Virus record (IMG/VR): IMGVR_UViG_3300044700_000691
Coordinates: 62,001 to 126,000 of that record
Reading direction: 5' to 3' (one strand)
Length of the DNA stretch: 64,000 nt
Part shown: positions 20,010-61,294 of the stretch, in pieces
Layout of the letters: the number at the start of each line of letters is the position of its first letter
Position numbering within the stretch: position 1 is the stretch's first letter
Program-made: the position numbers and the translations under genes
The notes under the pieces: model-generated
Told to the model about the DNA's origin: nothing
The model's database searches: none
The model's input: the letters and a program-made list of their open reading frames with translations, nothing else

Positions 20010-20014
20010 ATTAG

Positions 20015-23000
20015 TTATCTATTTTCAAGATTTTCAATTCTCTCGGTTAATTTTTTAATTATTTCATGCTGTTCTTGAATTGTCTTAATCAAGATTGGCG
20101 CGATACGAGTATAGTTAATACCATCAACTTGACCTTCACTATCATATTTAACTAATTCAGGATAGATTTCAGCAACCTCTTCCGCAATTAAACCAATTTC
20201 AGTTTCGCCAGTTCCACCAATTTTAACATAGTGAACTGGTCTTAGTTGTAAGACTTTATCTAGAGCTGGAGTTAGGGACTCAACTTGAGTTTTATATCTA
20301 ATAGATGATAATTCTATTAATCGATTTGCGATTGTTAGGGTTCCAGTATTACTTACTTCAAGTAAACGGTCTCCATCAATTGCACCTTGCCATATAACGA
20401 AATCATCCATTGTATTTGCACCACCGCCGACTCCACCGTCTGTATTTAGCACAAAATGGTGACCTCCTCTAGATTGGTATTCTAGCCAATAATTAGAGCC
20501 TGCTGCAAAACCTTCGCTTGGATAAGCTGCTGCTCGAATTATATTATAAAATCCGCCAGATCCGTCTCTAAATGCAAGTTCGCCGATGATATTTAAGTTT
20601 CCACTAAGGGTACCTCCACTTAGTGATAAGTAGTAGCTATCTGTAACCTGACTCCTAAAGTGACCAGGCGTAGATTTTCTTAAATAGTTATCACTTGTAT
20701 TTTGAGTCCAAATTTGACCAATAGTTGGGTTTTCTGAGTTACCAGCAGAAGCATTAAAATATGATCCTAAGACATAGTTTGAATAGATATTTCCGCTAGA
20801 GTCTCTTCGTACAATTGTATTTACGTTTGCTGCAGTATCTGAAGTATATCCATCCAATAAATCTGCGTCTAAACCAGAACCAGCTCCATCATTTCCTGCA
20901 TGCCAAGGCGTATATCCAAGAGCAGTAGTAACGTTTCCGCTTGTTATACTTGTTAAATATCCACTGTTATTAGTAAACTGTGAAATATTCATTGAGGTTA
21001 AAGCTCCGGCAGTGGTTGCAGTAGCAGCATTGCCGCTAATATTAGTTTGATCTCCTGTATTTGTACCAGAAGATGACCCACTAAAGTTAGTTGCACTTAT
21101 GGTGCCAGTAACAGAAAGGTTACCCCCACTAGTTAAAGATAATCTTCTAGCAGCGTTCCATTGAATAACAAAATCTGCACCAGCCGCCCCACCAGATCTA
21201 GTCATACCAAGTCTCCAGTGGTCGTTGTACCATTGATATTCATGACCAGAGACTAGGTCATTTGTGGTGTACGAAGATGGAATGTATACAGCAACCTCTC
21301 TTCCTTCACTACCGGTTATTGTTATTGGAGTTGACGTGGTTGCTCCTCTACCTGTTACACTCGCTAGAGTATCGGTTTCTGTATATCCAGTTATGTAACC
21401 TTGAGAAGTTACCCATGATTGAGTTGCTAATAGGTTTCCAGCTGCATACGGTACATATTTAAAATATGCAGTATTTGCAGTAGTTATTTCAAGCGCAACT
21501 ACAGTTGGATCATAGATATCACCATATCCAAGTTTAAAGCTATTTGTGTTAGCATTATTAGTCATTCCCATCGACCACATTGGTGCTCCTGTGTAATCCC
21601 AAGCAGTTCCTTGATATGTGCCCATGGCGGTCATAAACATTAGTGTTGCCTGATTCCCTGTTCCTTGTCGGCTAATGAATACTCTGGCAGTTCCTGTTTT
21701 AGCGCTAACATATAATTCTGGATTAGATCCAGCCAATTGAATTTGTGCTGGGTTAGCACTAATTGGAGAAATGTACAGATTTCCTGTCATTTCATCTCCA
21801 CCTATATTAACATATAGCCCGTCTGCTGTTGCTTGAGAAATTCCAGTTGATGCAAGCGTTACAGAGTTACCTCCTGAAATACTTAAGGTATTTCCAGAAA
21901 GACTAAGCGTTTGTGCATCAGTATTTGTATCAGTATCAATATCTGTCCAAGTTGCAGTTACTGTGCCTCCATCTCTTTGTGTAAGAGTTAGGGTTTTTGA
22001 AGTTGTTCCACTAACTGCAGCTGAAGTTATTGTATCATTATATGCAGAATTCCAATTCGCTGAAGTACCATGACTTGGCGTAGAAATTCCACTTGCATTA
22101 ATTACAATAGGCGCAGAAAAGGGTCCAATATTAACAGTATTATTAGCAAAGGCTTCGATTACAGGAAGACCTGCTACCGTATTTACTGAAAATAGAGAAT
22201 TTGAAAGATCATCACTTACTGTGAACAGTCTGCCATTAACTCCGTTTACTGCAAATAATTCCTGGCCGCTGGTTGAACCAGTAATTACTAAAGGCCCAGT
22301 CATTGTGTCGCCAGTTACATTAACATATAGCGGATTAGCTGCTGCTTGTGTTAACCAGCCGCCATAGTTTCCTAAGTCATTAGAGAATTGAGAAAGAGCA
22401 GTAGGTCTGCCTGTTACTCCAGTCCATGCTACATTCGTAGCGGTAGCAGCGTTTCCAGAAATACCAATTGCCCAAGTGCCGTTTTCCCAAACGTAATTGT
22501 AACCTGAACCAGTTTTTAAATTACCATCAGTTGCTAAATAAAATTTAAGAGCTCCAGATTGAGTAAACTTAATTTCTTCGTTTGAGTCATCTTGTGTACC
22601 AATTTCAAGGTAAGATCCTCCAGCCTGGTTGCCGGTTGATATAAATTTAATAAATGCGGCATCTGTATTTAATCCCCAAGTAAGTCCTAATCCAGATGTT
22701 GCACCAAAGGCAAGATTACCAGTCATTGTATCACCACTTTTAGAAACTTTGTTTCCTATTGATGTGGTAATTGTGGTAGCAAAATTAGCATCATTACCTA
22801 ATGCGGTAGCTAATTCGTTAAGTGTGTCTAGTGTACTAGGAGCCGATGCAACTAAGTTAGAAACAGCTGTGTTTACATAGGTTTGAGTTGCATATCCAGA
22901 AAGAGCGGAGGTTGTAATATAAGCTGGGCCATTGGTTAATTGGTTTAGGTTAGTTAAGTTACCAGCTGTCCATACTTGTGAGTTATCCCAATATAGCCTT

Positions 23001-38122: not shown

Positions 38123-41100
38123 TTAGATAAATTTCATTTTTGGTTCAATTATTAAACTTAATCGACCGGTTGTTTTTAAGGGAATTCTTAATTGAACAGA
38201 TCGTCCGTCTTTAATATTTATTTGGACTCCTTCTAGTTTCTTGTACCCTAACGCATAGCGCTCTGCCGCGGTTTTGGTAATAATTTCAAGGCCAGTCGGC
38301 TGGCTCTTATCTTCTATGTACCAGAATACAAGTTGGTCAATTGCATAGTTAGGTAAAATGTTCTCGATTGCATACTGTTTAACGTATGACGAAAAATCGT
38401 ATGATCCAAGTATTTCTGGATTTCTAGCAGTTGTATCAATATCAAAGCTGCCTGAAATTTGAGATTCTAGGCCTAATGATAAGACCTTTGCTGCAAAAAC
38501 ATTAGTTAAGTTTATATCAACTTGAGAGTCGCTAGTGTTTACTTTGTATAAAACGTCAGCCTCTCTATTAATATAGTCAGCCGAAATCGATGGAAACTCC
38601 AGTATTTCGCTAGAAGAAAGTGAATCTATTTCAATAGACGTCGGTAGCGAGGCAAGTTTAGCCATAAAATAAGAATCTTCGGCTATACGTCGGGTGCCGT
38701 ATGCTGGAATAGAATCAGTTTTATTAATATATTCTAAATGGAAGCCATAGTCCCAATTTGATGCAAGTAAATAAAGGTCACCGTTTGAGATTGGAGTTTC
38801 TCCAATTAATTCAAAGATTGGTTTATACTTATCGTTACCTTCCAGCTCTAGAATTTTCTTTTCTGAAACTTTGATATGTTCAAATCCTTTTACTTCAAAG
38901 AATCGATTTGCGTTTGGATTAAATTTGCAATTTGCGTCTTTAACTATTTCTAAATTTAAAGTTGTATCTGGCATAAATGCGGTAACTTCTCTAAAAATAG
39001 GAGAATAGGTTGAACCGTGTCTTCTTAGGAAAACCGGATTTTGTAAATACGATTCAGTTGCAGTATAGCCAACTAAGTTGGATGCCTGTCTTTTACTTGT
39101 AGTTTCGGCTTGCGTTAATTGTAGATTAACTGGTGAAACAGTTGGTATCTTTAATTTTTCAACAATGGTAGCCTCTTCAATTTCAATATAAAACTCATTT
39201 GTTGTTTTTACTCCGTTTGAATAGGTAGTATAGGTTACATTATCTCGGCCTCTATCAATTGATCGCTTAAACTCATTGAAACTTAATCTCTTAAATAATC
39301 CTTTGTAATAAGATTCTCCTCCAAGCAAAAGGGCAAAGTTTACTGATTCCCAATAACTAGTATCAAACGCAGGGATAGTTGATTCTCTTTTAATAATTTT
39401 ATCAATATTAAAGGTTGTTGCACCTGAAACAGTTTGTGCAGTTGGAATACCGGTAAATGCAAGTTCGCCAATTCCAGAGTCAGATCTCATTACAACACCA
39501 CTTGGCAAAATCTCCGAAATACCAGATTCATTTGATAATCTATAGATAGTTTGCTTAATTATTCTAAGAAGTTTTTTGTTTGCATCTCCTGGATAAGCTA
39601 AAATATTAAAGACTGAATTTGTTTCTGATGCCAGTACTTGTGCATTTGGATAGGTATATCCGGTGTCGCCAGTAGCTGTATTTTTTAATTCTAAAATATC
39701 AATAACGTTTAATAAAGTAGTACCTGCATAAGCTACCCGGTTTTGTGTAGCAAGCGCATGGCTAATATCCGATTGATAAAAATTAATAGGCGCCGCCGAA
39801 TTTTTTTGGAAAAATTTGACAGTAACGGCTGACCCAGTTGAGGTCGCAGCTGCCGATAACGTAACTTTAGTTATAAGTTGGCCGTTTGCATCAAGCGCAG
39901 CATTATTAACGCTAACTACATAGGCATTGGCCGGAATACCAGTGCCTGTTACATAGACTTTATTTGACGCATTATAGTTTAAACCAGTTGAATCACCATA
40001 CGATGCTAATTCTAAATTTGTATCGGCTTGTAAATATAGGTCAGCTGAACCTGATGTAATAGCGGCAGGCCGACTTTGATTTGATATATTTGATACAATT
40101 GCCTTGGACAAGGTTACGGCTGTGCCATTAACTGAATTGACTCTGGTTCCAGGCTTACTCCATCCAACAATTTCAACTTCAGATCCAATTAAAATTGAGG
40201 TGGCTGGCGCTGAGCTTAGCGTGATAATCGAAGAACCTCCTTCTACACTAGCAGTTACAGCTGGACTGAGAGCACTTCCAATTATTGTAGTTTGGTTAAC
40301 AAATGATTCTTTAATACTGTTTGATGTAATAATTCGGTTTTTAATAAATGGATATAAACTTAGTCCAGCTACACCATATGCATTATTTTCAGTTGTCGTA
40401 ATTCCTTGTGAAGTTCCTCCAGGAAGAGTAATAGTAGTTAAGGCTTGACCTTCTCCACTTGACAGGAGTCCATTTGAATTAATTGGAAAATCTAGCGTAA
40501 ATTCTTCTGGATTAGCTGTACCAAATACTTTAATTATAGTGGAGTCTTTATACGATAACATACTATTAACGCTAACTTTATTAATCTCGTCAGCTATTTG
40601 AATATCCGAGCCTTTATCTAACGAAAATACAAATGGTAACCCTCTGTCTCCATATCCAGCCGGCCTTGATAAATCTAAACTATTTACTAGATTTATGCTA
40701 CTGTAACTGTTAGCTAGTGTATTATACTTTTTGTTTTTTGCATAATACATAAAGGCTAACGTAATATCAGAAATTGATAGAATCCCGTTAGCCGTACTAA
40801 TTTGATTTATATTAAGTTTATAGTCAGAAAATGAAGCTGGCATATTATTGAATACATGCTGTTCATTTTGAGAAAGGCCGCCGGTTTTAGTTACAAGTAA
40901 TTCGGTTGGACTGGACACCAATGCATTTGATTTACGGCTAACTCTTAATTCAACTATTAACGTAATAAATTTAAAGTCTCGTGATTCAATAAATTTAAAT
41001 TGAATAGGATTTTCACCAGAGTATGGTGTCTCTTCTATTACCTTTAGGATTGACGTAAAACGATAATTATTAAAACGATTGGATTCTCTAACATATTTAA

Positions 41101-44100
41101 GAGCGCCGGATAATTCTTGTTCCACTGTATCTTGCACGACCTCTTTAAATACAAACTTAATTCCTTTAAATATAGATTTAGCAATGCCAGACACAGAGTC
41201 TTTTTTAATTTGGGAAAATCTATATTGCGTTCTTGCACAAGGCGTCATAACTCCATTATTTAAATAACTTGGAGTAAAAATAAAGTAGTCCTCAAAATAT
41301 CCAGCTTGCGTTACAGCTAGTGTTGGGTTAAACGGCGTATCAAAATATAGTTTGTTTTGAGACGCGGCAGTTATGTCATTAATATAATCATATAGAGATT
41401 CAATATAAAACCACTCATGCGTCATTAAACTTGAATCTGGCTCAACTTTATTTGGCTCGGGTGAAAAATTATTTACACCAAAAACTAAATCCGCATTTAA
41501 CCGATACGGGTTTGATCTTGAATCAAGGGAACCGTCTGCTCCCCATTTACAGATGTACTTAACCAATCGGTTTTTTCCAGCATTTTCAATTAAAAATCTT
41601 TCGTAATTTGAGTCGTACTCTGATGTAATTTTTCCGCTTGTAAATCTATCTCGATAAATGTATGATACTGTTTTAGAAGGAGAAACTTCAGCATAGTCTG
41701 ACGTGATTGTAAAAAATCCTTTAAAATCTAAAATATCTGGAGTATTATCAGCAAGCTCAACATCATAAGTAGGTGTTGTTAGTGATAGTGCTGGAATTAC
41801 AAACGGATCTCCGTTTATCGCTTCAAATTTAACAACCGTTGGTAGTACTGTTTTTTCAATTAAATCTCCATCACTATATGTAGACGTTCCAATTTTAATA
41901 CTACCATTTAAAACTCGATATGCAGATTTTCCTAGGTTAATCATATTAATTCCTTCTGGAATAAATGCAGATTTCCAGACATCACTTAATTGAGTAGACG
42001 CGTATTGGCTATCAGTATGGTCAAAATCAAAATCTTTAATTGGGATAATTGATAATGCACTAATTGTTGGTTTATATTTCTTTTTAATTTGAACTAGTCC
42101 AAATTTTAAAAGAGCTTCTGTGCCGTTTTCTGTTAATACGTTTATATTATTATCGTAATAGTCTACTGCTTTAATTTTATCAGCTTCGCTAGTAAATGTA
42201 TTGGTGTTTATGTAATCTATACTCTTAACAATATTTTCAATTTCAACCCAACCAGAAGGCGATTGTACTAGAATATCTGCCTTATTTGTATGTAATTTAT
42301 TGAAATATTGGCCTTCAACTGAAATATGCGAGGATAGTGCTGAGCCAGGCTTAAAATTAACTACTTGACATCCAATTATGTCAGTTTGGTCTAAATTTCC
42401 TATACCAAACGTTAGGGTTTTTACTCCAGCTTCTGCAATCAAAGTACCAAATAAGTAGTTAATTTGATTAATACTGGGTGAAGCTTCGCCATATACAATA
42501 TAATCGCTATTAGTTAAATCGATAGTTGTACTAGAACTTGTTCCAAGTAGGTCGGCTGCCGTTTTCTTAAAAATTGGCTCGTCTGATATAGTTATCTTAA
42601 GGTCACTACTGGCTGGAATATATTGGGCAGCATATTCTAATGAAACATTACCTTCGGTATTTACAACAATAAATATTCGGTTTTGATAAGAAAATGCTTT
42701 AAATCCACTGTTTTGTATAGCGTTAATTGCTTCGGTTATCGACTCTGCAATTTTTTGTAATTGAGTCGCTAGATCTTCCTGCTGTACAACATTAATACTA
42801 TAGTAAAATTGATCTGGCCCATATTCATTGTATAGAGCAAGCGCTCCAAGTAGAGTCGACCCATTATATGAAAAATTAGATACCGCAGTAAGTGTTTCAA
42901 ATCTCTTAGAATTTTGATTAGTCGCTTTTCCATTTGGATAATAAATTCTAAGTTGATCTAGGTGGTTTGGGATTGCGTCAATTGAAATTTCAATAAATGA
43001 TTGGATTCCACCTTCTGTATAATCGGCAGAGTCTTCCATAAATGTTTCAGTTGGACCGTGTAGTAGAGACAAATCTATTGATTTACTCGAAATCTTTAAT
43101 TTTGAATCTAAAATATTTGCTTGCGTAACTTTATGTAAGTTACCTAACTTATCTTCAAGTGTGATAATACCAGCTCCATCTAATTCAGACAATGCAGAAG
43201 AAACCGACGCTGGAATTGCATGAAATTTTAAGTCTAATCCATTTTCATTAGTTTGGGTAAATGGTGTTTGCGCATATTCATATGTGTTAGGATCAGTAAT
43301 GGTTGGAGAATTTAATGCAAGCGCAGCATGATCGCTTAAGTCAAAATCTAGCTCGGCTAACTCTACAGTATTACAGTAAATTCCAAAATATCTATTAAAT
43401 TCAAAGTCGTCTGACGTGTCGTCAAATAGAAATTCTAGATTTAGAATATTTGGATAAATTACAGAGTTTCTCTCATAACCTAGAGTTACATATTCTTCAA
43501 AGTCAGTAATAGTTTTACCGCCTATAATTAAGTCTTGTAGGTTTTCAAATTTTTCAGTGTAACAGCCAACTTTATAGGCAACTCCCGAATATGATGCAAG
43601 CAAGCCTCTGTTAAATGGAAAGTTTAGTGTAGTCGACGGAAATAACGGATTGCTCTGCATCTTTTTAAGATACGTACCGATATGCGAGTCTACTCCTAAG
43701 TCAAAGGTTTTTATAATTTGAGCACCATCCAGTATGCTTTTTAAATGTCCAGCCTTGGCATATGGATAGCTTGCTTTGGTTTCCGAAATTGGCAAGTGAC
43801 TTGCCCCGGGGATTTTAAAAATTACAAATTTTTCTGGGACCTCTTTATTTAAATATATTGGCGCAAAGTACTTGAACTTTTCAGAATAATTCTTTGATAT
43901 ACAGTATCGCGCGCCTGAAAAATATTCAGAAAAATCGTATTGGTCAGCAAAATTTGATGATGTTGAATCCAGTGCGACATTTGTTTTTACGCCAAATACA
44001 ATTGATTCTGGCGTATTTCCATTACTAAAAAATCTATATAGATTTGAATCATGATTAGACGTTGGGTCAATTGGATAGGCTTTATACTTATCATTTGCTA

Positions 44101-44245
44101 ATTCAGAGCTTGCCTCAATTGATTCAAAATATAAATTTTGGTTAGCATCTACCACTAACTTAATATTCCCTGTAAGTTTAGGGTTAGTTCTAACTAATCC
44201 AAATGATGTGTCAAAAGGTGTAATCTTTTTATAAGATAATGCCAC
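38123..44245 (-). CDS. Very large hypothetical protein, probably virion/baseplate (2040 aa, GTG start)
   Basis: Long intact ORF in a late operon; no catalytic motif recognised. Confidence 0.6.
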   Translation of the reverse strand: MALSYKKITPFDTSFGLVRTNPKLTGNIKLVVDANQNLYFESIEASSELANDKYKAYPIDPTSNHDSNLYRFFSNGNTPESIVFGVKTNVALDSTSSNFADQYDFSEYFSGARYCISKNYSEKFKYFAPIYLNKEVPEKFVIFKIPGASHLPISETKASYPYAKAGHLKSILDGAQIIKTFDLGVDSHIGTYLKKMQSNPLFPSTTLNFPFNRGLLASYSGVAYKVGCYTEKFENLQDLIIGGKTITDFEEYVTLGYERNSVIYPNILNLEFLFDDTSDDFEFNRYFGIYCNTVELAELDFDLSDHAALALNSPTITDPNTYEYAQTPFTQTNENGLDLKFHAIPASVSSALSELDGAGIITLEDKLGNLHKVTQANILDSKLKISSKSIDLSLLHGPTETFMEDSADYTEGGIQSFIEISIDAIPNHLDQLRIYYPNGKATNQNSKRFETLTAVSNFSYNGSTLLGALALYNEYGPDQFYYSINVVQQEDLATQLQKIAESITEAINAIQNSGFKAFSYQNRIFIVVNTEGNVSLEYAAQYIPASSDLKITISDEPIFKKTAADLLGTSSSTTIDLTNSDYIVYGEASPSINQINYLFGTLIAEAGVKTLTFGIGNLDQTDIIGCQVVNFKPGSALSSHISVEGQYFNKLHTNKADILVQSPSGWVEIENIVKSIDYINTNTFTSEADKIKAVDYYDNNINVLTENGTEALLKFGLVQIKKKYKPTISALSIIPIKDFDFDHTDSQYASTQLSDVWKSAFIPEGINMINLGKSAYRVLNGSIKIGTSTYSDGDLIEKTVLPTVVKFEAINGDPFVIPALSLTTPTYDVELADNTPDILDFKGFFTITSDYAEVSPSKTVSYIYRDRFTSGKITSEYDSNYERFLIENAGKNRLVKYICKWGADGSLDSRSNPYRLNADLVFGVNNFSPEPNKVEPDSSLMTHEWFYIESLYDYINDITAASQNKLYFDTPFNPTLAVTQAGYFEDYFIFTPSYLNNGVMTPCARTQYRFSQIKKDSVSGIAKSIFKGIKFVFKEVVQDTVEQELSGALKYVRESNRFNNYRFTSILKVIEETPYSGENPIQFKFIESRDFKFITLIVELRVSRKSNALVSSPTELLVTKTGGLSQNEQHVFNNMPASFSDYKLNINQISTANGILSISDITLAFMYYAKNKKYNTLANSYSSINLVNSLDLSRPAGYGDRGLPFVFSLDKGSDIQIADEINKVSVNSMLSYKDSTIIKVFGTANPEEFTLDFPINSNGLLSSGEGQALTTITLPGGTSQGITTTENNAYGVAGLSLYPFIKNRIITSNSIKESFVNQTTIIGSALSPAVTASVEGGSSIITLSSAPATSILIGSEVEIVGWSKPGTRVNSVNGTAVTLSKAIVSNISNQSRPAAITSGSADLYLQADTNLELASYGDSTGLNYNASNKVYVTGTGIPANAYVVSVNNAALDANGQLITKVTLSAAATSTGSAVTVKFFQKNSAAPINFYQSDISHALATQNRVAYAGTTLLNVIDILELKNTATGDTGYTYPNAQVLASETNSVFNILAYPGDANKKLLRIIKQTIYRLSNESGISEILPSGVVMRSDSGIGELAFTGIPTAQTVSGATTFNIDKIIKRESTIPAFDTSYWESVNFALLLGGESYYKGLFKRLSFNEFKRSIDRGRDNVTYTTYSNGVKTTNEFYIEIEEATIVEKLKIPTVSPVNLQLTQAETTSKRQASNLVGYTATESYLQNPVFLRRHGSTYSPIFREVTAFMPDTTLNLEIVKDANCKFNPNANRFFEVKGFEHIKVSEKKILELEGNDKYKPIFELIGETPISNGDLYLLASNWDYGFHLEYINKTDSIPAYGTRRIAEDSYFMAKLASLPTSIEIDSLSSSEILEFPSISADYINREADVLYKVNTSDSQVDINLTNVFAAKVLSLGLESQISGSFDIDTTARNPEILGSYDFSSYVKQYAIENILPNYAIDQLVFWYIEDKSQPTGLEIITKTAAERYALGYKKLEGVQINIKDGRSVQLRIPLKTTGRLSLIIEPKMKFI

Positions 44246-51209: not shown

Positions 51210-52034
51210 TTATATAGTACTTAAATTTATCTCTGTTCCATTATTTCTGTTAATAATAGTACCATCTGCTAAGATTTCGTAATCATCAAAATTAATATCA
51301 ATCATTTGGGCATCTGCTCGTAGAGAGTTTTTAGCTAAACTTGAAGTGATTGGTCTAGAGTTTAAACTACTTTCAATATAGTCAATATAGTCGTCTTTGG
51401 CCATTACTTTAACGAATCTTCTTTCTGGAAGAGGGTGTTCATTTCCCCAAAGATCAATAACGGTTCCGGATATTTCATATTCACCAACTTCGTCAAATCT
51501 CCAAATAAAAGTCCAGCCTGCTTCAACCTCTGCCATTGTAACCGGAGAAGAACCCGATGTAACATTGACAAGTTTCCATAACACTGTAGATTTTCCCATG
51601 ACTTCTCTTGCAGAGATAAACACTGGAAGATGTTTGGGAACAGTTAGACGATCTGTCGCAATTTTTAATTCAGAAATATCTAGTGAATTTTTAGTAAAAA
51701 ATGAAGGAATGAATCCTACCTGTTTTCCGTCTTTATATGAAATATACCCAAGATTTTTCCAATATTCTGGTTCATGCACCTTTCTAAGTACCTCAACACC
51801 ATTTTCAATAAACTTTCTTCCGTAAATCTGATCGTTAAGCGGGGCATACACCATAAGGTTTTCGACGTCAAACGCTGGTATAATTCCATACAATTTTAGT
51901 TGCTCAAGATTTGACATTTGCTCCTTAGAGTAGGTGTCAACCGGCTCATAATAAGAATACTTATTATTTGAACTAAATACAACATTGGCACTAGGTAAGC
52001 CAATTGCAGATATGTTAACGTAGGTGATTGGCAT
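51210..52034 (-). CDS. Hypothetical virion protein with a PKD/Ig-like segment
   Basis: WKLVN...FIWRFDEVGEYEISGTVIDLWGN. Confidence 0.55.
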   Translation of the reverse strand: MPITYVNISAIGLPSANVVFSSNNKYSYYEPVDTYSKEQMSNLEQLKLYGIIPAFDVENLMVYAPLNDQIYGRKFIENGVEVLRKVHEPEYWKNLGYISYKDGKQVGFIPSFFTKNSLDISELKIATDRLTVPKHLPVFISAREVMGKSTVLWKLVNVTSGSSPVTMAEVEAGWTFIWRFDEVGEYEISGTVIDLWGNEHPLPERRFVKVMAKDDYIDYIESSLNSRPITSSLAKNSLRADAQMIDINFDDYEILADGTIINRNNGTEINLSTI

Positions 52035-55000
52035 TAATTGTGGTTAATTTTTAATTTAGCAGATCTAACTCCAATTGAGTTTGGTTGAACTCTAATTTTT
52101 ACGTTATATGTATCGCTAGGGTTAATATCAATACTATTAATTGCGCTAACCTCAGTTTCAGTTTGACCAGATGTTAATACCAGTTTAAATTCATCTGAGT
52201 CTTGGTCTAGTGTTATTGTCTGTATTGCAAGTTTACTAGAGGAGCCTGTGTTTGTAATTGGTATAGTTAGGTCTCTGCTTGCGCCAACCTCAGTTGAATT
52301 AAAAACAATAGGGGCGTTAGCGGATCCGACGGTAAAACTTGGAGCAGCTACTAAGATTGATACATTGACTCTATTTGATGAGGTGCCGCTTGATCCAAGT
52401 ACTCTAAATGTAAACAGATCAGTTCCAGTATAGTCCTGGTTTGGAATATATCTAATTACGTAATTATTAAAGGTTACTGTTCCTTGGGTTGGGTTTGCTG
52501 TTATATTAAGTCCGTTAAATATTGACCCATTTAAATTAACAAAAGACAGTGTATTAATATCTACATATAGGTTTCTGCCTACGGTTTGTTGAGGCACCTG
52601 CGATAAAATTGGAGATGCAGCTTGTATAATAAGCGATCTGGTTGAAGATGTTGTTTGAATAACACCTGTACTATTGTTTGTTCCAGTTACAGTAATATCA
52701 TATGTGCCAGCGGCAACGGCAGTATATGTTATTGGATTATTATTTGTACCTGACCCTAAACTTGATGTAATAACATAATTATTAACATATTCAGAAGCAG
52801 CACTAAATGTGATATTTGAGCCGCTGCTGATTGGATTTGCAAATATCTGTAAATTTGCAAAATCTATAACTGGCATAGGAGGCAATACTGTTACTGGAAT
52901 CTGTTTAGTAAAACTATTTAGTAGCGAATAATTTTTAAATGGTGAATTATAGATCACGGTTAAGGTTGGTGTAACCTGTTGATTGTCATTGGCAATTACC
53001 CATGTTGCAGTAAATGATCTACTTACATTGTTTGGTATAAAGCTAGCCGAAAGTGTTGTGCCGCTTTGGCTAACAGCAACACTATATAGACCGTCTGTTG
53101 CAAATTCAGGAATCCACTCTGGTGAGTCCGGCTGGGTCGTAACTTGAACCATCGAAGCTATTCCTTGTCTTAATTGAGTATACGATAAATTTATATCGGA
53201 AACTGGGCGACCTATTACCAGCTCTCTATTTACGCTAAATTCAGATCCGTCTTGAAACAAACCAGACAAGACTATTCGATAATAACCAGGAACACTTGGC
53301 CTAAATGCAAGGGAGGTTAAATCTGCTGCATATTGATAATACGTCCACATTTCTGGAGCTTGAATTGATGCAAGGTCAGTTGTTCCGTTGACTATTGCAA
53401 ACGGTTTCCATATAGTATCACTTGGACTATATTTTCTTTCTACCGCCCAGGTTAGAGTAGTTAAATTAACCTGTTGTAGAGTAGTCGTTAACTGATATAC
53501 ACCAGGCCTCGGATCTTCGCTCGTAGGGTCAAACGTTGAAATATAAGATCGGTTTGAATTTGCAGCAGAATTTGTAATAAATCTATATGATTCAGCTGAT
53601 TCATTACTTTCAGATAAAGCAATTGTTGTTAACCCTAATTGGGCTAAATTAGTACCAGCTGCAATACCTGCTGTGTTGACCGATACTGCGGCTGAATATA
53701 AAAAGGTGAGCCCATCGTCTCTTTGAGCATAGGCTTTTGCATAATACTGAGTATTTGCAGTAAGGCCGGCCAATTGACTGATTAAGGCAGCTGGACTAAT
53801 ATTTGGTGCAAGAACGCCTGTTTCGACTTTAACTACACCAGCCGCGCCATCTACTAAATTGGTAGAGTTACCCAGTTTAAATAAAAGACCATATCTAGTG
53901 TAGATATCGCCGGAACTATTAGTAAATGTTGAGCTTAGGGTAGCGCCGGTTTGAGTTAGGTTACTTATAATTGGAGTTGATATATTACTATTATTACTAA
54001 GGGTAGTAAATGTCGTAATTTGAGATGTACCATTTCCAGTTGAGTTAGTTGCGACTGCATCCACTGTATATTGAGTAAGCGGAGTTAATCCAGTAAACTG
54101 CACAGAAATTCCAAGATTAAAGCTTGTTATGGCTATACTTGATACTAAAACTGAATTTTGATATAGCCTAAATCTTACTGCTGTTACATCACTGCCGCCG
54201 TTATTTGAAATTGTTGTGGTTACAGTTGCAGTACTTGCAGTTATTGCACTAACCGTTGGTGTAGTTAAGGTAGCAACCGTTCCGGTTGATGTCGGCGTAC
54301 ATGCTGTATATTCAATCGTTGCACCACATGGAGTGCCTGTTCCAGACGCTGGTGTTATTACATATCGCGTTTGAAATCTTTGATATGATCCGTTTCTTAG
54401 TTGGCATGGAGAAAATGCGCCAGCCACCCAAGTTTCTTGAGTTGCACCATAACCCCAATTACTTAGCACACAATTTACTGGCGTCGAAGCTGGCGCACAT
54501 GCTGAATCGCTAGTACAGGTTGAGGTGCCGCCGGCTACTATAATTCCATATGATCCTGGGTCAAATATAGGTTCACCGTATAATAATATAGTTGGTGTAG
54601 TTGATGAACACATATATAGTGTTCTGACATTGCCTGAAGTCGTGTAAATTGACCAGTTTGATGCAAATACTTGAGAAGTGAATTGGTCGCCGACTGGAGT
54701 ATACCGAAATTCTACATCCGATAGTGAATTATCCACTGTGTTAATTGCAATTGAATAACACATTGACTCGGGTTGATTGCCAATATATCCAGGAGAACAA
54801 TCATCATCCGCTGTACATGGAGAAGAACCTCCAGTTAAGGTCATGCCGTATTCTGAGAAATTTGAAATTTGACCAGATACTAAAAGAACTGGTTCACTTT
54901 GTCCAGATGCACAAAAATAATAGGTATTTCCTTCTGGGCCCATTGATGCTTCCATATACATTTGGTCCAATTGAATAGAAATTGGTTGTGGTTCTCCAGG

Positions 55001-55081
55001 TTGAGTATACACTAAAGTTTTTCCAAATCTTTCAACTGAATCTGGTATAGTTAATTGATAACAAAAAGCGAATACTGACAT
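52034..55081 (-). CDS. Multi-domain adhesin-like virion protein: two Cys-rich repeats, TSP1-like domain, FN3 domains and Ig-like domains
   Basis: Two C..GG.S.CT.D..C repeats. TSR-like VNCVLSNW..SPC..QTRYVITPASGTGTPC..C. FN3-like TGLTPLTQYTVDAVATNSTG and AGLTANTQYYAKAYA. Big_9-like YIPNQDYTGTDLFTFRV. Confidence 0.7.
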   Translation of the reverse strand: MSVFAFCYQLTIPDSVERFGKTLVYTQPGEPQPISIQLDQMYMEASMGPEGNTYYFCASGQSEPVLLVSGQISNFSEYGMTLTGGSSPCTADDDCSPGYIGNQPESMCYSIAINTVDNSLSDVEFRYTPVGDQFTSQVFASNWSIYTTSGNVRTLYMCSSTTPTILLYGEPIFDPGSYGIIVAGGTSTCTSDSACAPASTPVNCVLSNWGYGATQETWVAGAFSPCQLRNGSYQRFQTRYVITPASGTGTPCGATIEYTACTPTSTGTVATLTTPTVSAITASTATVTTTISNNGGSDVTAVRFRLYQNSVLVSSIAITSFNLGISVQFTGLTPLTQYTVDAVATNSTGNGTSQITTFTTLSNNSNISTPIISNLTQTGATLSSTFTNSSGDIYTRYGLLFKLGNSTNLVDGAAGVVKVETGVLAPNISPAALISQLAGLTANTQYYAKAYAQRDDGLTFLYSAAVSVNTAGIAAGTNLAQLGLTTIALSESNESAESYRFITNSAANSNRSYISTFDPTSEDPRPGVYQLTTTLQQVNLTTLTWAVERKYSPSDTIWKPFAIVNGTTDLASIQAPEMWTYYQYAADLTSLAFRPSVPGYYRIVLSGLFQDGSEFSVNRELVIGRPVSDINLSYTQLRQGIASMVQVTTQPDSPEWIPEFATDGLYSVAVSQSGTTLSASFIPNNVSRSFTATWVIANDNQQVTPTLTVIYNSPFKNYSLLNSFTKQIPVTVLPPMPVIDFANLQIFANPISSGSNITFSAASEYVNNYVITSSLGSGTNNNPITYTAVAAGTYDITVTGTNNSTGVIQTTSSTRSLIIQAASPILSQVPQQTVGRNLYVDINTLSFVNLNGSIFNGLNITANPTQGTVTFNNYVIRYIPNQDYTGTDLFTFRVLGSSGTSSNRVNVSILVAAPSFTVGSANAPIVFNSTEVGASRDLTIPITNTGSSSKLAIQTITLDQDSDEFKLVLTSGQTETEVSAINSIDINPSDTYNVKIRVQPNSIGVRSAKLKINHN

Positions 55082-57640: not shown

Positions 57641-58060
57641 TTAGATCGTGTAGATTTCGCTCTCGCCAGAGTGGCTTAGTGAAATCGTAATTATCTTTTC
57701 GCCTTTTCCAATATGCTTATAGATCTTTTTATATTCTTTAGCATATCCGTTTTTTGAGATTTGTGTAAAGTAGGCAAATGCATTATTTGATTTCTCTTCA
57801 TTAAAGTTTCGCCAGTATCGCAAAAGGTCCAATTGCGCGGATTGAATACAGTCCTCGCGGTCTAGCGGATTTTTAAATACTAGTTTTTGGATAGCACGGT
57901 TTGACAACAGGATAAAATATTCAATTGCTTTTGGAGAAAGCTCCCCCTTTGTGTGCTGGTAGCCAGTTTCTTCATTTAAGTACCCGTGTTTGCATCGGAT
58001 AATTTCGTTAGTAAAGTCTCTATTATTAATATAGAACTTTGGGTCTTTAATTCTTGCCAT
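57641..58060 (-). CDS. Late-transcription sigma factor, T4 gp55-like
   Basis: YINNRDF, REDCIQSA...YWRNFNEEKSNNAFAYFTQI are hallmark gp55 motifs. Confidence 0.85.
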   Translation of the reverse strand: MARIKDPKFYINNRDFTNEIIRCKHGYLNEETGYQHTKGELSPKAIEYFILLSNRAIQKLVFKNPLDREDCIQSAQLDLLRYWRNFNEEKSNNAFAYFTQISKNGYAKEYKKIYKHIGKGEKIITISLSHSGESEIYTI

Positions 58061-58722
58061 TACGTTAGTGCTTGGTAAATTTTTAATACGCTTAAATACG
58101 AATCAACTAGATCGGGAAATGGTGATTTAATCTCAGATGATGTGACTAGTTCTGTTCTATATTTATTTAAGCATTTAGCTAAAGCTGAGTCTCTGGCTGC
58201 ATCTATTTTGGGGTCTTCGATAAATTGATTAAATACATCAAATTTATTAGCATTACCCTTTGCTCCTATTGCATTCTTTAGTTCCGAAGGTGAAAATATA
58301 AAAAGTCCAGATAAATTCTTATCTAAAAGGCGGTCTGCTATAGTTTTCTTTAAGATTCCAGTAGTTTGAACAATATCGACTAAAGAATTACCCTTAGCGC
58401 CATATGCAAAACCTTCAATTCCTACAATAATAGGCTTTTGTATAACTTTAGTTAAAACCGTATCAATTAAAGTATTGACTAATATAATCTGATTTTGTAA
58501 TTTCTTACGTTCAGTGTCTGAATAGCTTGCTCCTTTATTATTCTTTTCTCCTAAATTAACAATATGGATATCTGGAAACTCTAGGTTAATACCTTCTAAG
58601 AAGTGAAGATATGATTTACTTAATTTGGTGTTTGTGACAGCAACCCATTTAAAAGTCTTGAAGTCATGACTGATACAAGCAGCTGGGAAGTTAATAGAGA
58701 AGTCAAATCCTATAATAGTCAC
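58060..58722 (-). CDS. RuvC-like Holliday junction resolvase (GTG start)
   Basis: IIGFDFS, IEGFAYG, PSELK...KGNANK and DLVDS give the RuvC-type catalytic pattern. Confidence 0.75.
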   Translation of the reverse strand: MTIIGFDFSINFPAACISHDFKTFKWVAVTNTKLSKSYLHFLEGINLEFPDIHIVNLGEKNNKGASYSDTERKKLQNQIILVNTLIDTVLTKVIQKPIIVGIEGFAYGAKGNSLVDIVQTTGILKKTIADRLLDKNLSGLFIFSPSELKNAIGAKGNANKFDVFNQFIEDPKIDAARDSALAKCLNKYRTELVTSSEIKSPFPDLVDSYLSVLKIYQALT

Positions 58723-59701: not shown

Positions 59702-61294
59702 ATGTCAAAAACAATAATTTTTGATGCTGATGCAAGAAACCGATTAAAAGTTGGTGTTGATACATTAGCCAATTCAGTAAAAGTAACAATGGGTCCAGGT
59801 GGACGTAATGTCGTTATCGCAAGAGATGGCGGTTTAGCTGTTACAAAGGACGGAGTTTCCGTTGCTAGAGAAGTAGTATTATCTGATCATATTGCTGATG
59901 TTGGTGCGCAAATGGTAAAACAGGTTGCACACAAAGTTGCGCAGTTAGCCGGCGATGGTACAACCACGGCAACAGTATTAACTCAAGAAATTTTCAATAG
60001 AGGATTAAAAGCAGTTGCGACAGGAGCCAACCCAATCGAATTAAAAAGAGGTATGGATGCTGCTTTAACTGAAATAGTTGCAGCGCTAAGCCAATCATCA
60101 ATTCCAGTTAAAGATCTTACTCACATTCATCAAGTTGCAACAATTTCTGCAAATAACGATGAATCTATGGGTGCTTTAATTACTCAATGTATGGAGGCAG
60201 TTGGATTTGATGGAATTATTACGGTTGAGCAAAGTAAATCAGCTGAAACCTATGTTGATATAGTAGAAGGAATGCAATTTAAATCAGGCTACCTATCACC
60301 ATATTTTATTAATTCTAACGAAAAACCTCAAGTTGAATTTGAAAACGCCCTAATCTTATTAGTAGATGGTAAAGTTTCTGTGCTAAATGATATTGTACAG
60401 TTCTTAGAATATTCAAATCAAAAGGGTCGTCCACTATTAGTTATTTCTGAAAGTGTAGACGGCGATGCTTTAAATACAATGGTTCTTAATAAATTAAGAG
60501 GAACAATTAAAGCAGCAGCGGTTAGAGCTCCAGGCTTTGGAGAATTACGTAAAGAAAACCTAGACGATATTGCAATCCTAACTGGCGCCAAAACCGTCTC
60601 TGAACGAGAGGGTTATTCATTAGCTGAAACCATTGCTTCTGAAGTATTAGGTTCAGCCACTAAAGTTATTGTTACAGCAGACTCTACTACAATTATTGGT
60701 GGAGAAGGCCTGCAAGACTCGATTAAAGAGCGTATTTCAGATATTAATGCTCAAATTGAAAACAGCACAAACGAATCAGCAACCCTAATTCTTAAAGAGC
60801 GTATTGCTAGAATAGATGGTGGAGTTGCTATTATTAAAGTAGGAGCCCACTCTGAAATTGAAATGCGTGAGAAAATTGACCGCATTGACGATGCAATAGG
60901 TGCAACCAGAGCGGCAGTTGAAGAAGGTATTGTTGTAGGCGGTGGAGTTGCACTTTGTAAAATTGCTGAAGAATTAACACCAACTATTGCTCAAACCCAA
61001 AACTTTGAACATAGACTAGGTCGTACAATCTTATTAGAATCATGTCTAGCACCATTTAGAGTTATTTTAACTAATGCAGGAGAGTCACCAGATGCAATTC
61101 TTTCAGAAATGAAGAATAGAGGTCAGGAATATAATGTAAAAACCAGAGAATATTGTAATTTTATTGACTCAGGTATTATTGATCCAGCTAAAGTAGCCAG
61201 AGTAGCTATTGAAAATGCAGTTTCGATTGCATCTATGATGCTTACAACTGAGGTCTTAATGGTACAAGACCCACCTACAGAAACTAAGGCGTAA
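59702..61294 (+). CDS. groEL: Phage-encoded chaperonin GroEL (Cpn60)
   Basis: VKVTMGPGGRNV, TKDGVSVA, AGDGTTTATVL, EGMQFKSGYLSPYF, APGFGE.RK, GGVAIIKVGA, GIIDPAKV. Confidence 0.97.
   Translation: MSKTIIFDADARNRLKVGVDTLANSVKVTMGPGGRNVVIARDGGLAVTKDGVSVAREVVLSDHIADVGAQMVKQVAHKVAQLAGDGTTTATVLTQEIFNRGLKAVATGANPIELKRGMDAALTEIVAALSQSSIPVKDLTHIHQVATISANNDESMGALITQCMEAVGFDGIITVEQSKSAETYVDIVEGMQFKSGYLSPYFINSNEKPQVEFENALILLVDGKVSVLNDIVQFLEYSNQKGRPLLVISESVDGDALNTMVLNKLRGTIKAAAVRAPGFGELRKENLDDIAILTGAKTVSEREGYSLAETIASEVLGSATKVIVTADSTTIIGGEGLQDSIKERISDINAQIENSTNESATLILKERIARIDGGVAIIKVGAHSEIEMREKIDRIDDAIGATRAAVEEGIVVGGGVALCKIAEELTPTIAQTQNFEHRLGRTILLESCLAPFRVILTNAGESPDAILSEMKNRGQEYNVKTREYCNFIDSGIIDPAKVARVAIENAVSIASMMLTTEVLMVQDPPTETKA

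What the first reader, a model, noticed from the sequence alone, without database searches (positions are those of the whole stretch)
54296..54480. Thrombospondin type-1 (spondin-like) domain in a phage protein
Seen: PVNCVLSNW...AFSPC....YQRFQTRYVITPASGTGTPCGATIEYTAC. Known: spondin-type TSRs follow VDC.VS.W..WS.CS..CG.G...R.R.V...P..GG..CP...E...C, have disulfides 1-4, 2-5 and 3-6, and are mainly eukaryotic adhesion modules. Here Cys3 and Cys6 are both missing, consistent with loss of one disulfide pair. The domain sits among FN3 and Ig-like domains. Inference: a eukaryote-like adhesion module displayed on the virion, for example for binding glycans, mucus or algal surfaces where the host lives.
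Basis: partly seen in the sequence, partly recalled or inferred. Interest (0 to 1): 0.6.

Follow-up and report, generated by a model that had tools for sequence, protein, structure and literature searches.

The report
Genuine thrombospondin repeat in phage protein
A large protein in the tail/fibre gene block of an uncultured jumbo phage carries a real but divergent thrombospondin type-1 repeat, one of a small, barely documented pool of such repeats in environmental phages, so this "animal" adhesion fold is also used by bacterial viruses.

Summary
Residues 201-261 of a 1,015-aa protein (window 52034-55081, minus strand; nt 54299-54481) form a thrombospondin type-1 repeat (TSR). The window's own copy is below Pfam thresholds (TSP1_spondin 14-22 bits, cut-off 41). 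Several orthologues pass the TSP_1 cut-off. A profile of this family alone retrieves bona fide TSR proteins from 1.84 billion sequences. A profile of TSRs from other phages scores it 65 bits, against 11.5 for the best shuffle. The AlphaFold model (pLDDT 88.8) matches only TSRs in three independent structure searches.

The closest single-domain relatives sit in at least five unrelated phage contexts, and about 75 IMG/VR loci carry such repeats, so it is not a one-off eukaryotic import. It is not basic, so GAG-type binding is unsupported. It is the most conserved domain of the protein. Before it lie two variable Cys-rich repeats with no PDB fold match in these searches. I read it as a rigid stalk module that presents those repeats on a virion fibre or decoration. 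Virion display and ligand are inferred, not shown.

The parts
52034..55081 (-). Gene for the 1,015-aa multidomain protein P0001. It has no signal peptide. All 12 Cys lie in the first 261 residues.
   Evidence: ORF and translation. 38 orthologues of 917-1023 aa. Synteny is conserved in a 267-kb relative.
54782..55081 (-). Cys-rich repeat 1 (aa 1-100, 4 Cys). It is absent from the ~920-aa orthologues.
   Evidence: Alignments. Most variable part of the protein.
54491..54781 (-). Cys-rich repeat 2 (aa 101-197, 4 invariant Cys). Small beta-rich domain with no PDB fold match in these searches.
   Evidence: AF2 pLDDT 94.7, pTM 0.85. Foldseek best E 0.23 and VIA best Z 4.4, with heterogeneous hits.
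54299..54481 (-). Thrombospondin type-1 repeat (aa 201-261). Spondin/group-2 type with 4 Cys (C204, C226, C252, C261), W209/W218/F223 on strand A, R235/Q237/R239 on strand B, and an 11-residue insertion Y211-G221.
   Evidence: Pfam, AF2, fold searches, reciprocal profile search, independent phage-TSR profile at 65 bits.
54014..54259 (-). FN3 domain (aa 275-356)
   Evidence: PF00041 27.4 bits, above the 25-bit cut-off, when the segment is scanned alone.
52838..54013 (-). aa 357-748: uncharacterised middle region. The start looks like a second FN3-like unit; aa 470-745 has no family hit.
   Evidence: No Pfam hit for 470-760. Not folded here.
52661..52837 (-). PKD-like Ig domain (aa 749-807), below threshold
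   Evidence: PF00801 19.5 bits against a 23.5-bit cut-off.
52361..52540 (-). Big_9 bacterial Ig domain (aa 848-907)
   Evidence: PF17963 28.0 bits, above the 23.6-bit cut-off.
52040..52318 (-). C-terminal Cep192_D4/ASH-like Ig domain (aa 922-1014). Well conserved; candidate virion-attachment end.
   Evidence: PF22073 36.4 bits, above the 35.5-bit cut-off. Conservation 0.66/0.61.

Best explanation
Residues 201-261 are a true but divergent TSR of the spondin (group 2) kind. SHOWN: homology to TSRs and a TSR fold. The two Cys pairs that cap the Trp/Arg-layered core are retained (C204 with C252, C226 with C261, by alignment position). The third, bottom disulfide is lost. An 11-residue insertion lengthens strand A. 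The domain belongs to a phage-borne TSR pool with reduced Cys content. INFERRED: the protein is a bead-on-a-string fibre or decoration of the virion. Its gene lies at the head of a long co-directional block of tail, baseplate and fibre genes, just after a late sigma-factor-like gene. The conserved C-terminal Ig-like domains would hold it on the particle, and the N-terminal 260 residues would be the exposed distal end. Within that end, the TSR would act mainly as a rigid rod-like stalk or junction. It is the most conserved domain, whereas the two Cys-rich repeats before it vary in sequence and in copy number, as expected of ligand-contacting tips. The protein has no signal peptide and is made in a reducing cytoplasm. 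The genome shows a thioredoxin but no Erv or DsbA oxidase. The six predicted disulfides therefore probably form only after lysis, locking the distal module in the oxidising environment.
For: TSR identity:
- All 36 distinct family segments hit TSP1_spondin, and 27 of 36 hit TSP_1. Orthologues exceed the 21.6-bit cut-off (30.9, 27.7 and 26.3 bits).
- The family profile searched against 1.84 billion proteins returns 86 hits. One is the orthologue cluster. All 10 of the others that were checked carry PF19028 (9 also PF00090) far above threshold.
- An independent phage-TSR profile scores the segment 65 bits, against 11.5 bits for the best shuffle, and 63.9 bits in the genome search.
- The AF2 model has pLDDT 88.8.
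- The Foldseek PDB top 50 are all TSR proteins (C6, C8, C9, Unc5, ADAMTS13, TSP-1, properdin, Sema5A). Best hit: TM 0.64, rmsd 2.0.
- The Foldseek-independent VIA search of 48,161 chains lists 23 entries at Z>=2, all TSR or TSR-like. Best Z 5.5 and 5.1.
- The ESM Atlas's nearest models are spondin-1, spondin-2, R-spondin-3 and SBSPON (TM 0.68-0.73, rmsd 1.1-2.1).
- As a control, the neighbouring Cys-rich repeat model gives no specific match in the same searches.

Disulfide logic: Tan et al. 2002 describe the group-2 C1 layer as formed between strands A and C, with a dispensable third disulfide.

Context:
- Neighbouring genes and conserved synteny.
- Per-domain conservation, and Cys confined to residues 1-261 in all orthologues.
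- Thioredoxin present; no Erv or DsbA found.
Against: - The window's own copy is below both Pfam cut-offs (best 21.9 bits against 41), and its Trp spacing is not WxxWxxW.
- One Arg layer is Gln (Q237).
- No proteomic, EM or homology evidence places the protein in the virion. tblastn against 50,697 GenBank phage records finds nothing.
- High conservation of a 60-residue domain may only reflect its dense core, not a stalk role.
- In classical tail fibres the N-terminus is the anchor, which is the opposite polarity to the one proposed here.
Confidence: 0.6

Rival explanations
1. The TSR itself is the ligand-binding adhesin. It would bind glycans, sulfated polysaccharides, mucus or algal surfaces, as eukaryotic TSRs bind GAGs.
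For: TSRs of TSP-1, F-spondin, ADAMTS-4 and TRAP mediate GAG or matrix binding (Tan et al. 2002). The domain lies in the presumably exposed part of the protein. Its strong conservation could reflect a conserved ligand.
Against: The domain has net charge about +1 (3 Arg, 0 Lys, 2 Glu), and about 0 in the family consensus. That is unlike the basic front face linked to GAG binding. One Arg layer is replaced by an invariant Gln. The variable, copy-number-variable Cys-rich repeats are better candidates for specificity. The habitat is unknown.
Confidence: 0.2
2. The domain is a recent capture from a eukaryote (alga, protist or animal). The phage carries it as a eukaryote mimic.
For: Annotated TSRs are overwhelmingly eukaryotic. 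The nearest Atlas shapes are all eukaryotic spondins. Algal giant viruses carry TSP1 proteins. None of 401 sampled genomes of one bacterial phylum has a phage-type TSR.
Against: The best single-domain matches are phage-borne: P0102 38 bits, P0105 26, P0092/P0076 23 and P0043 22.6, each in a different phage context. A Flavobacterium contig with a phage-type lysin carries repeats that share the RYVITPAS motif. About 75 IMG/VR loci carry such repeats. In a quick, weakly resolved tree, the family (SH-aLRT 99) groups with reduced-Cys TSRs, apart from the cluster holding the eukaryote-context and six-Cys repeats. The gene is conserved with synteny in orthologues down to about 50% identity.
Confidence: 0.1
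3. The protein is not a virion component. It would be a released or accessory protein, for example a lysis-associated or host-surface-modifying factor, as the signal-peptide-bearing TSR proteins of temperate phages may be.
For: P0102 and P0105 are TSR proteins in other phage contigs. Both have N-terminal hydrophobic leader-like sequences, and P0102 lies next to an M15 endolysin gene. There is no direct virion evidence for P0001.
Against: P0001 has no leader sequence. It is 1,015 aa of FN3 and Ig-like beads, which is typical of virion surfaces. It sits at the head of a tail, baseplate and fibre gene block downstream of a late sigma-like gene.
Confidence: 0.1
4. Chance resemblance: a Cys- and Trp-containing stretch that merely looks like a TSR.
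For: The window's own sequence is below Pfam thresholds. The direct PDB sequence search gave only noise, and the profile search added one weak Unc5B TSR hit (E 0.27).
Against: 65 bits against 11.5 bits for the best shuffle. The reciprocal profile search recovers TSRs. Three structure searches return only TSRs.
Confidence: 0.02

Closest known systems
Spondin-type (group 2) thrombospondin type-1 repeats, Pfam PF19028 (F-spondin, R-spondin, SBSPON)
   Same: Same three-strand layered fold (TM 0.68-0.73, rmsd 1.1-2.1 A). An N-terminal Cys on strand A pairs by position with the Cys after the GG motif. The WSPC-type motif is present in most orthologues, and there is an Arg-bearing strand B.
   Different: The AB-loop Cys and the last Cys are missing, so there are two disulfides rather than three. 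An 11-residue insertion lies in strand A. One Arg layer is Gln. F223 replaces the third Trp in the window's copy. The score is only 14-22 bits against the 41-bit cut-off. No O-fucosylation or C-mannosylation motif or machinery is expected.
TSRs of complement C6, C8 and C9
   Same: Best solved-structure matches (Foldseek TM 0.64, rmsd 2.0; VIA Z 5.5). According to Tan et al. 2002, the C-terminal TSRs of C6-C9 also lack the third disulfide.
   Different: Those are group 1 (C1 layer between strands B and C) and belong to pore-forming immune proteins of animals.
Phage-borne TSR proteins found here (P0043, P0092, P0102, P0105, P0051 = WP_182650583.1, the L035 protein) and UniProt A0A6J5N7M8 'Thrombospondin type-1 (TSP1) repeat (Fragment)', uncultured Caudovirales phage
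   Same: Closest relatives by single-domain score. They share the TR-x-VITPAS-NGG signature and reduced Cys content (4 or 2 Cys). P0102, P0043, P0101 and P0105 also have a lengthened strand A. A0A6J5N7M8 is the best BFVD structure match (E 6.9e-4, 32% identity).
   Different: They come from different phage lineages and have different architectures (tandem TSRs, beta-helix-like C-terminus, signal peptides). Only the P0001 family has the full 11-residue insertion and the arrangement of two Cys-rich repeats, one TSR, then FN3.
TSP1-domain proteins of prasinoviruses and other giant viruses
   Same: Viral proteins with TSR folds (BFVD hits from Micromonas, Ostreococcus and Bathycoccus viruses).
   Different: Those are viruses of eukaryotic algae, whose hosts themselves have TSR proteins. 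Here the virus is a tailed phage.
Ig-like/FN3 virion decorations of phages (T4 Hoc type), and the animal-type adhesion domains listed for jumbo phages by Iyer et al. 2021 (PMC7824862)
   Same: A string of small beta-sandwich domains in a structural-module protein. Jumbo phages are already known to carry discoidin, LamG, SPRY and C1q domains on fibres and decorations.
   Different: TSR is not in that list. There is no sequence homology to Hoc. The location on the virion is untested.

Membership tests
Thrombospondin type-1 repeat (Pfam TSP1_spondin PF19028 / TSP_1 PF00090) | HMM score above the curated gathering cut-off, for the window's own sequence | tested here: not met
   PF19028 scores 14.1 bits in the whole protein and 17.9-21.9 bits when cut out, against a 41-bit cut-off. 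PF00090 was not reported for the window's copy.
Thrombospondin type-1 repeat (Pfam TSP1_spondin PF19028 / TSP_1 PF00090) | HMM score above the cut-off in orthologous copies of the same domain | tested here: met
   PF00090 (cut-off 21.6 bits): P0023 30.9, P0029 27.7, P0020 26.3, and P0011, P0039, P0018 and P0027 about 23. All 36 of 36 hit PF19028 as top family, and 27 of 36 hit PF00090.
Thrombospondin type-1 repeat | Reciprocal homology: a profile of the candidate retrieves accepted TSRs, and TSR profiles retrieve the candidate | tested here: met
   The A1 profile gives 86 hits in 1.84 billion proteins. All 10 of 10 checked carry PF19028 at 87-458 bits. The A3 profile of other phage TSRs scores P0001 at 65.3 bits.
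Thrombospondin type-1 repeat | Three-stranded antiparallel layered fold (irregular strand A, regular strands B and C) | tested here: met
   AF2 pLDDT 88.8, with strands at domain residues 36-47 and 60-64. Only TSRs are returned by Foldseek-PDB, VIA-wide and the Atlas. This is a predicted model, not an experimental structure.
Thrombospondin type-1 repeat | WxxWxxW tryptophan ladder on strand A | tested here: inconclusive
   W209, W218 and F223 (Trp in most orthologues) are present, but with spacings of 9 and 5 instead of 3 and 3. Stacking could not be inspected because no coordinates were available.
Thrombospondin type-1 repeat | Arg ladder on strand B (RxRxR) interdigitating with the Trp residues | tested here: inconclusive
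   The sequence is R235-x-Q237-x-R239. R239 and Q237 are invariant, and Q237 aligns with a canonical Arg. Tan et al. 2002 note that R-layer substitutions occur in accepted TSRs.
Group 2 (F-spondin type) TSR | C1-layer disulfide between the start of strand A and strand C, plus the C2-layer disulfide | tested here: met
   C204, C226, C252 and C261 align with the corresponding Cys of spondin-type repeats and are conserved in all orthologues. Met at sequence level only; the bonds themselves were not observed.
Canonical six-Cys TSR | Third (bottom) disulfide from the AB-loop Cys to the C-terminal Cys | tested here: not met
   N230 occupies the AB-loop Cys position and no Cys follows C261. At least 22 of 64 near-full-length TSR matches among the hits also lack the AB-loop Cys.
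Phage virion Ig-like/FN3 decoration or fibre proteins | Physical presence on the virion surface | not testable with these tools
   Only the gene's position in the tail/fibre block and FN3, Big_9 and Cep192_D4 domains above cut-off. No homologue in annotated phages.

The most novel reading that the evidence does not exclude
Tailed phages carry their own lineage of TSRs. It would be adapted to folding in the bacterial cytoplasm by stepwise loss of disulfides (6 to 4 to 2 Cys) and by lengthening of the Trp/Arg ladder. It would be combined with a previously undescribed 95-residue four-Cys beta domain into a modular adhesin toolkit shared by jumbo, crAss-like and other phages. If this lineage is old, the TSR fold would not be a eukaryotic invention, and phages could have been a vehicle for its spread.
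Probability: 0.2. Interest if true: 0.7.

Novelty: new variant of a known kind. Interest (0 to 1): 0.5.

Why it matters
TSRs are textbook extracellular modules of animals and apicomplexan parasites. They depend on the secretory pathway for disulfides and glycosylation. This work shows a well-supported TSR in a conserved jumbo-phage structural-module protein, together with a pool of related repeats in unrelated phages. That widens the known range of the fold. It gives a natural series of disulfide-reduced TSRs for studying how the Trp/Arg-layered core folds without the eukaryotic machinery. It also points to a candidate phage adhesin module (TSR plus a Cys-rich domain with no PDB fold match here) that current phage annotation (PHROGs, Pfam thresholds) misses. 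No paper describing phage TSRs turned up in the library searched. The 2021 jumbo-phage survey lists other animal-type adhesion domains but not this one.

Tried and rejected
- PDB sequence searches with the single sequence gave only noise. The A1 profile added only a weak Unc5B TSR match (E 0.27).
- tblastn against 50,697 GenBank phage records found nothing. Queries were P0001, its residues 264-1015, its TSR, and the crAss-like phage TSRs. This says nothing beyond BLAST sensitivity.
- PHROGs had no family for P0001.
- The genome-contig scan gave one hit, L011, in an alphaproteobacterial MAG. It is a chance 10-residue motif in a 130-aa protein and was rejected.
- 'Relatives' cannot be drawn for a virus record. 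L020's genome is not held, so no Bacteroidota sample could be searched. The only phylum sampled was that of G001, with 0 of 401 genomes matching. The positive control on the phage's own genome worked.
Accession searches in papers found nothing.
- The Atlas feature search of the N-terminal 198 residues gave no usable hit.
- The Cys-rich repeat model had no convincing fold match.
- The careful tree did not finish. Only a quick, weakly resolved tree is reported. It used 7 family representatives, the 21 A3 rows, and at most two domains per other hit protein. All other domains were left out.
- Model coordinates are not exposed, so Cys-Cys distances and Trp/Arg stacking were not measured.
- L023 (the contig of P0040) looks animal-like (TMEM72 and sparse genes). 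I did not compare or search it further.
Full report
**Where it is**

The quoted peptide lies on the minus strand. It is residues 201-261 of a 1,015-aa ORF at window 52034-55081, nucleotides 54299-54481. The window is positions 62001-126000 of a 216.8-kb IMG/VR virus record with 36.6% G+C. Neighbouring genes identify a jumbo tailed phage:
- a late sigma-factor-like gene, a RuvC-like resolvase, a GroEL-like chaperonin and a DNA polymerase exonuclease;
- then a long co-directional block with tail-fibre-like, baseplate-wedge and head-closure-like genes and ORFs of 1,960-2,240 aa.

Two flanking proteins (1,224 aa and 839 aa) have distant homologues. These occur only in jumbo or huge phages of Bacteroidota (Tenacibaculum, Flavobacterium, Chryseobacterium, Prevotella Lak phages), in Sphingomonas phage PAU, and in uncultured huge phages. 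A Bacteroidota host is plausible but not shown.

**Is it a TSR? Sequence evidence**

The window's own copy is sub-threshold in Pfam. TSP1_spondin scores 14.1 bits in the whole protein and up to 21.9 bits when the segment is cut out, against a 41-bit cut-off.

The word search found 38 orthologues of 917-1023 aa at 47-96% identity over the N-terminal region. In the family consensus, the window's F-S-P-C is W-S-P-C, the classical TSR motif. All 36 distinct domain segments have TSP1_spondin as their top family. Of these, 27 also hit TSP_1, and several exceed its 21.6-bit gathering score (30.9, 27.7 and 26.3 bits).

The test also works in reverse. A profile made only from this family, run against 1.84 billion representative proteins, gave 86 hits at E<=1e-3. 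One was the orthologue cluster. The rest were mostly multi-repeat proteins, and all ten that I checked carry PF19028 at 87-458 bits; nine of them also carry PF00090.

I then built a profile from 21 TSRs taken from other phage proteins, with no family member included (A3). It scores the window's segment at 65.3 bits (E 3e-19). The best of 2,000 shuffles of the same residues scores 11.5 bits. The same profile finds exactly one place in the phage genome, as does PF19028.

**Is it a TSR? Structure evidence**

AlphaFold2 on the 36-sequence alignment gave mean pLDDT 88.8. Four searches followed.
- Foldseek against the PDB. All 50 top rows are TSR-containing proteins (complement C6, C8 and C9, Unc5, ADAMTS13, thrombospondin-1, properdin, semaphorin-5A). 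E-values are weak because the domain is small (best 0.013), but TM by query is about 0.64 and rmsd about 2 A over 66-71 columns.
- VIA-align, which is independent of Foldseek, against 48,161 chains. Only 27 chains reach Z>=2. All 23 listed entries are TSRs or TSR-like domains. The best are C8 (Z 5.5) and TSP-1 TSR2-3 (Z 5.1).
- ESM Atlas. The nearest models are spondin-1, spondin-2, R-spondin-3 and SBSPON (TM 0.68-0.73, rmsd 1.1-2.1 A).
- BFVD. The best match is a UniProt entry already named 'Thrombospondin type-1 (TSP1) repeat (Fragment)' from an uncultured Caudovirales phage (E 6.9e-4, 32% identity). Prasinovirus and other giant-virus TSP1 proteins follow.

As an internal control, the equally confident model of the adjacent Cys-rich repeat (pLDDT 94.7) gave only heterogeneous noise in the same searches.

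**Anatomy of the domain**

Aligned to six-Cys repeats, C204 matches the N-terminal Cys of spondin-type repeats. C226 matches the Cys of the WS-x-C motif. C252 matches the Cys after the GG motif; it sits one residue earlier in most orthologues. C261 matches the Cys at the end of strand C. N230 occupies the AB-loop Cys position, and no Cys follows C261.

Tan et al. 2002 (PMC2173040) describe group-2 TSRs as having the top Cys layer formed between strands A and C. They describe the third disulfide (AB loop to C-terminus) as one that consolidates the bottom of the domain, and note that the C-terminal TSRs of C6-C9 lack it. The two pairs that cap the layered core are the ones kept.

Other departures from the canonical repeat:
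- The Trp ladder is W209, W218 and F223, with an 11-residue insertion (Y211-G221).
- The strand-B ladder is R235, Q237 and R239, with an invariant Gln where a canonical Arg sits.
- The domain has 3 Arg, 0 Lys and 2 Glu, so it lacks the basic face that the same paper links to GAG binding.

**The rest of the protein**

Two homologous repeats of about 97 residues, each with four invariant Cys, come before the TSR. The ~920-aa orthologues lack the first repeat. FN3 (275-356), an uncharacterised middle region, a PKD-like segment, Big_9 and a Cep192_D4/ASH-like Ig domain come after it.

All 12 Cys are in the first 261 residues and are conserved in every orthologue. The remaining 754 residues have none.

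Among the more distant orthologues, the TSR is the most conserved domain (identity to P0001 0.71 in long forms and 0.64 in short forms). The C-terminal Ig domains follow (about 0.61-0.66). The Cys-rich repeats are the least conserved (0.36-0.48). Gene order around the protein is the same in a 267-kb relative.

**A phage-borne TSR pool**

Ranked by single-domain score, the best non-orthologous matches are in phage contexts:
- P0102 (38 bits): a P22/lambda-like contig with integrase, NinB and a pectate-lyase-like tailspike, next to an M15 endolysin.
- P0105 (26 bits): a contig with ERF and YqaJ recombination genes.
- P0092/P0076 (23 bits): next to a crAss-type capsid gene.
- P0043 (22.6 bits): a contig with T7-type capsid genes.
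- P0051: annotated by NCBI as a thrombospondin type-1 domain protein of Flavobacterium sp. SOK18b. It lies on an 8-kb contig of small ORFs with a GH108/PG_binding_3 lysin and is 51% identical to the crAss-like phage's repeats.

Two other hits sit in eukaryote-like contexts.

The phage repeats share a TR-x-VITPAS-NGG signature and form a series of Cys loss: six, four (like P0001), or two Cys (P0051 and P0105, which also lack the first and fourth). A subset has a lengthened strand A and strand B.

A pattern scan of IMG/VR with the A3 profile returned 75 confirmed loci. Most are on 10-145-kb contigs, and a minority are on giant-virus bins. By contrast, there was no BLAST-level match in 50,697 GenBank phage records, and none in 401 sampled genomes of one bacterial phylum.

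The Cys-rich repeat also recurs near TSRs. It appears at the C-terminus of the crAss-like P0092 (hhalign E 1.2e-4, 33% identity, all four Cys aligned). It also appears two genes downstream of a five-TSR protein in L035.

A quick tree on 70 columns is poorly resolved. It keeps the family together (SH-aLRT 99) beside other reduced-Cys repeats, away from the cluster holding the eukaryote-context and six-Cys repeats.

**How it most likely works**

Shown: a real TSR, conserved, in a protein of the late structural gene block. The steps below are inferred.
- The protein is a bead-on-a-string fibre or decoration, held by its conserved C-terminal Ig-like domains.
- The N-terminal Cys-rich repeats form the variable distal tip.
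- The TSR acts as a stiff, highly conserved stalk or junction.

There is no signal peptide. The genome shows a thioredoxin but no Erv- or DsbA-type oxidase. The disulfides therefore probably close after lysis.

Direct glycan or GAG binding by the TSR remains possible but is not favoured by its charge or by the pattern of variability. Recent capture from a eukaryote is not favoured by the closest relatives. A non-virion role cannot be excluded.

**Literature**

No paper in the searchable library describes TSRs in phages or in Flavobacterium. The comparative survey of 224 jumbo phages lists discoidin, LamG, SPRY and C1q domains on fibres and decorations, but not TSR (PMC7824862). Aravind and colleagues treat TSP1 as an animal-type adhesion domain transferred to apicomplexans (PMC3417536). 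Automatic annotation has already labelled at least two phage-context proteins as TSR-containing.

**Verdict**

The 'eukaryote-like import that binds glycans or mucus' part is unproven and partly contradicted. This is a new variant of a known domain in an unusual host. It is of moderate interest, chiefly because it exposes an unrecognised phage TSR pool and a partner domain with no PDB fold match in these searches.

Noticed in passing
window 54491-55081 (-), aa 1-197 of P0001: Two tandem repeats of about 97 aa, each with four invariant Cys (CY-Q-x-x-I ... CS ... GG-x-S-x-C-T-x-D-x-x-C). The AF2 model is very confident (pLDDT 94.7, pTM 0.85), but Foldseek (best E 0.23) and VIA-align (best Z 4.4, mixed folds) find no match. 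This may be a new small disulfide-stabilised beta domain. It recurs beside TSRs in a crAss-like phage protein (P0092 C-terminus) and in L035.
   Followed up: partly
L016 10001-11170 (P0102); L017 10001-11218 (P0105): TSR proteins in temperate-looking phage contigs begin with hydrophobic leader-like sequences. One lies directly after an M15 endolysin gene. They look like exported accessory proteins rather than virion parts, so phage TSRs seem to occur in two settings.
   Followed up: no
L035 525-3332: A 27.5-kb viral contig has a run of extremely Cys-rich genes. These include a 555-aa protein with five TSRs, then FN3-like proteins, one of which ends in a copy of the Cys-rich repeat.
   Followed up: partly
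alignment A3 (P0102, P0043, P0101, P0105 rows): A subset of phage TSRs has both a longer strand A (W-x-x-W-x-x-x-G-x-W) and four extra residues in strand B (TR-x-E-x-RTR). This looks like an added Trp/Arg layer. The P0001 family appears to be a further-extended form of this type.
   Followed up: partly
L020 (Flavobacterium sp. SOK18b contig QKNZ01000039.1): The NCBI 'thrombospondin type-1 domain-containing protein' WP_182650583.1 sits on an 8-kb contig of small unannotated ORFs with a GH108/PG_binding_3 lysin. It shares an N-terminal segment and its TSRs with a crAss-like phage protein. It is probably phage or prophage DNA rather than a core bacterial gene.
   Followed up: partly
window 59702-61294 (+): The phage encodes a full-length GroEL-like chaperonin (phrog_5725, E 1e-148). 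It lies just outside the structural block and is conserved at the same place in the 267-kb relative (L012).
   Followed up: no
window 57641-58060 (-) and 58060-58722 (-): A late sigma-factor-like gene (phrog_234) and a RuvC-like resolvase lie immediately upstream of the 839-aa and TSR-protein genes. This suggests that the block is late-transcribed.
   Followed up: no
window 13287-25897 (-) and 38123-44245 (-): There are three giant ORFs of 2,240, 1,960 and 2,040 aa. The 1,960-aa one has many tail-fibre PHROG matches, and the 2,040-aa one matches only an unknown PHROG.
   Followed up: no
G000:C1:214753-215025 (outside the window): A 96-aa thioredoxin gene (74.7 bits) is present. No Erv1/ALR or DsbA homologue was found in the 216.8-kb record, which is estimated to be 84% complete.
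   Followed up: partly
P0001 aa 252 compared with orthologues: The Cys after the GG motif sits one residue later in the window's copy and a few close relatives (G-T-P-C) than in most orthologues (G-T-C). The BC loop therefore tolerates a register shift of the presumed disulfide partner.
   Followed up: no
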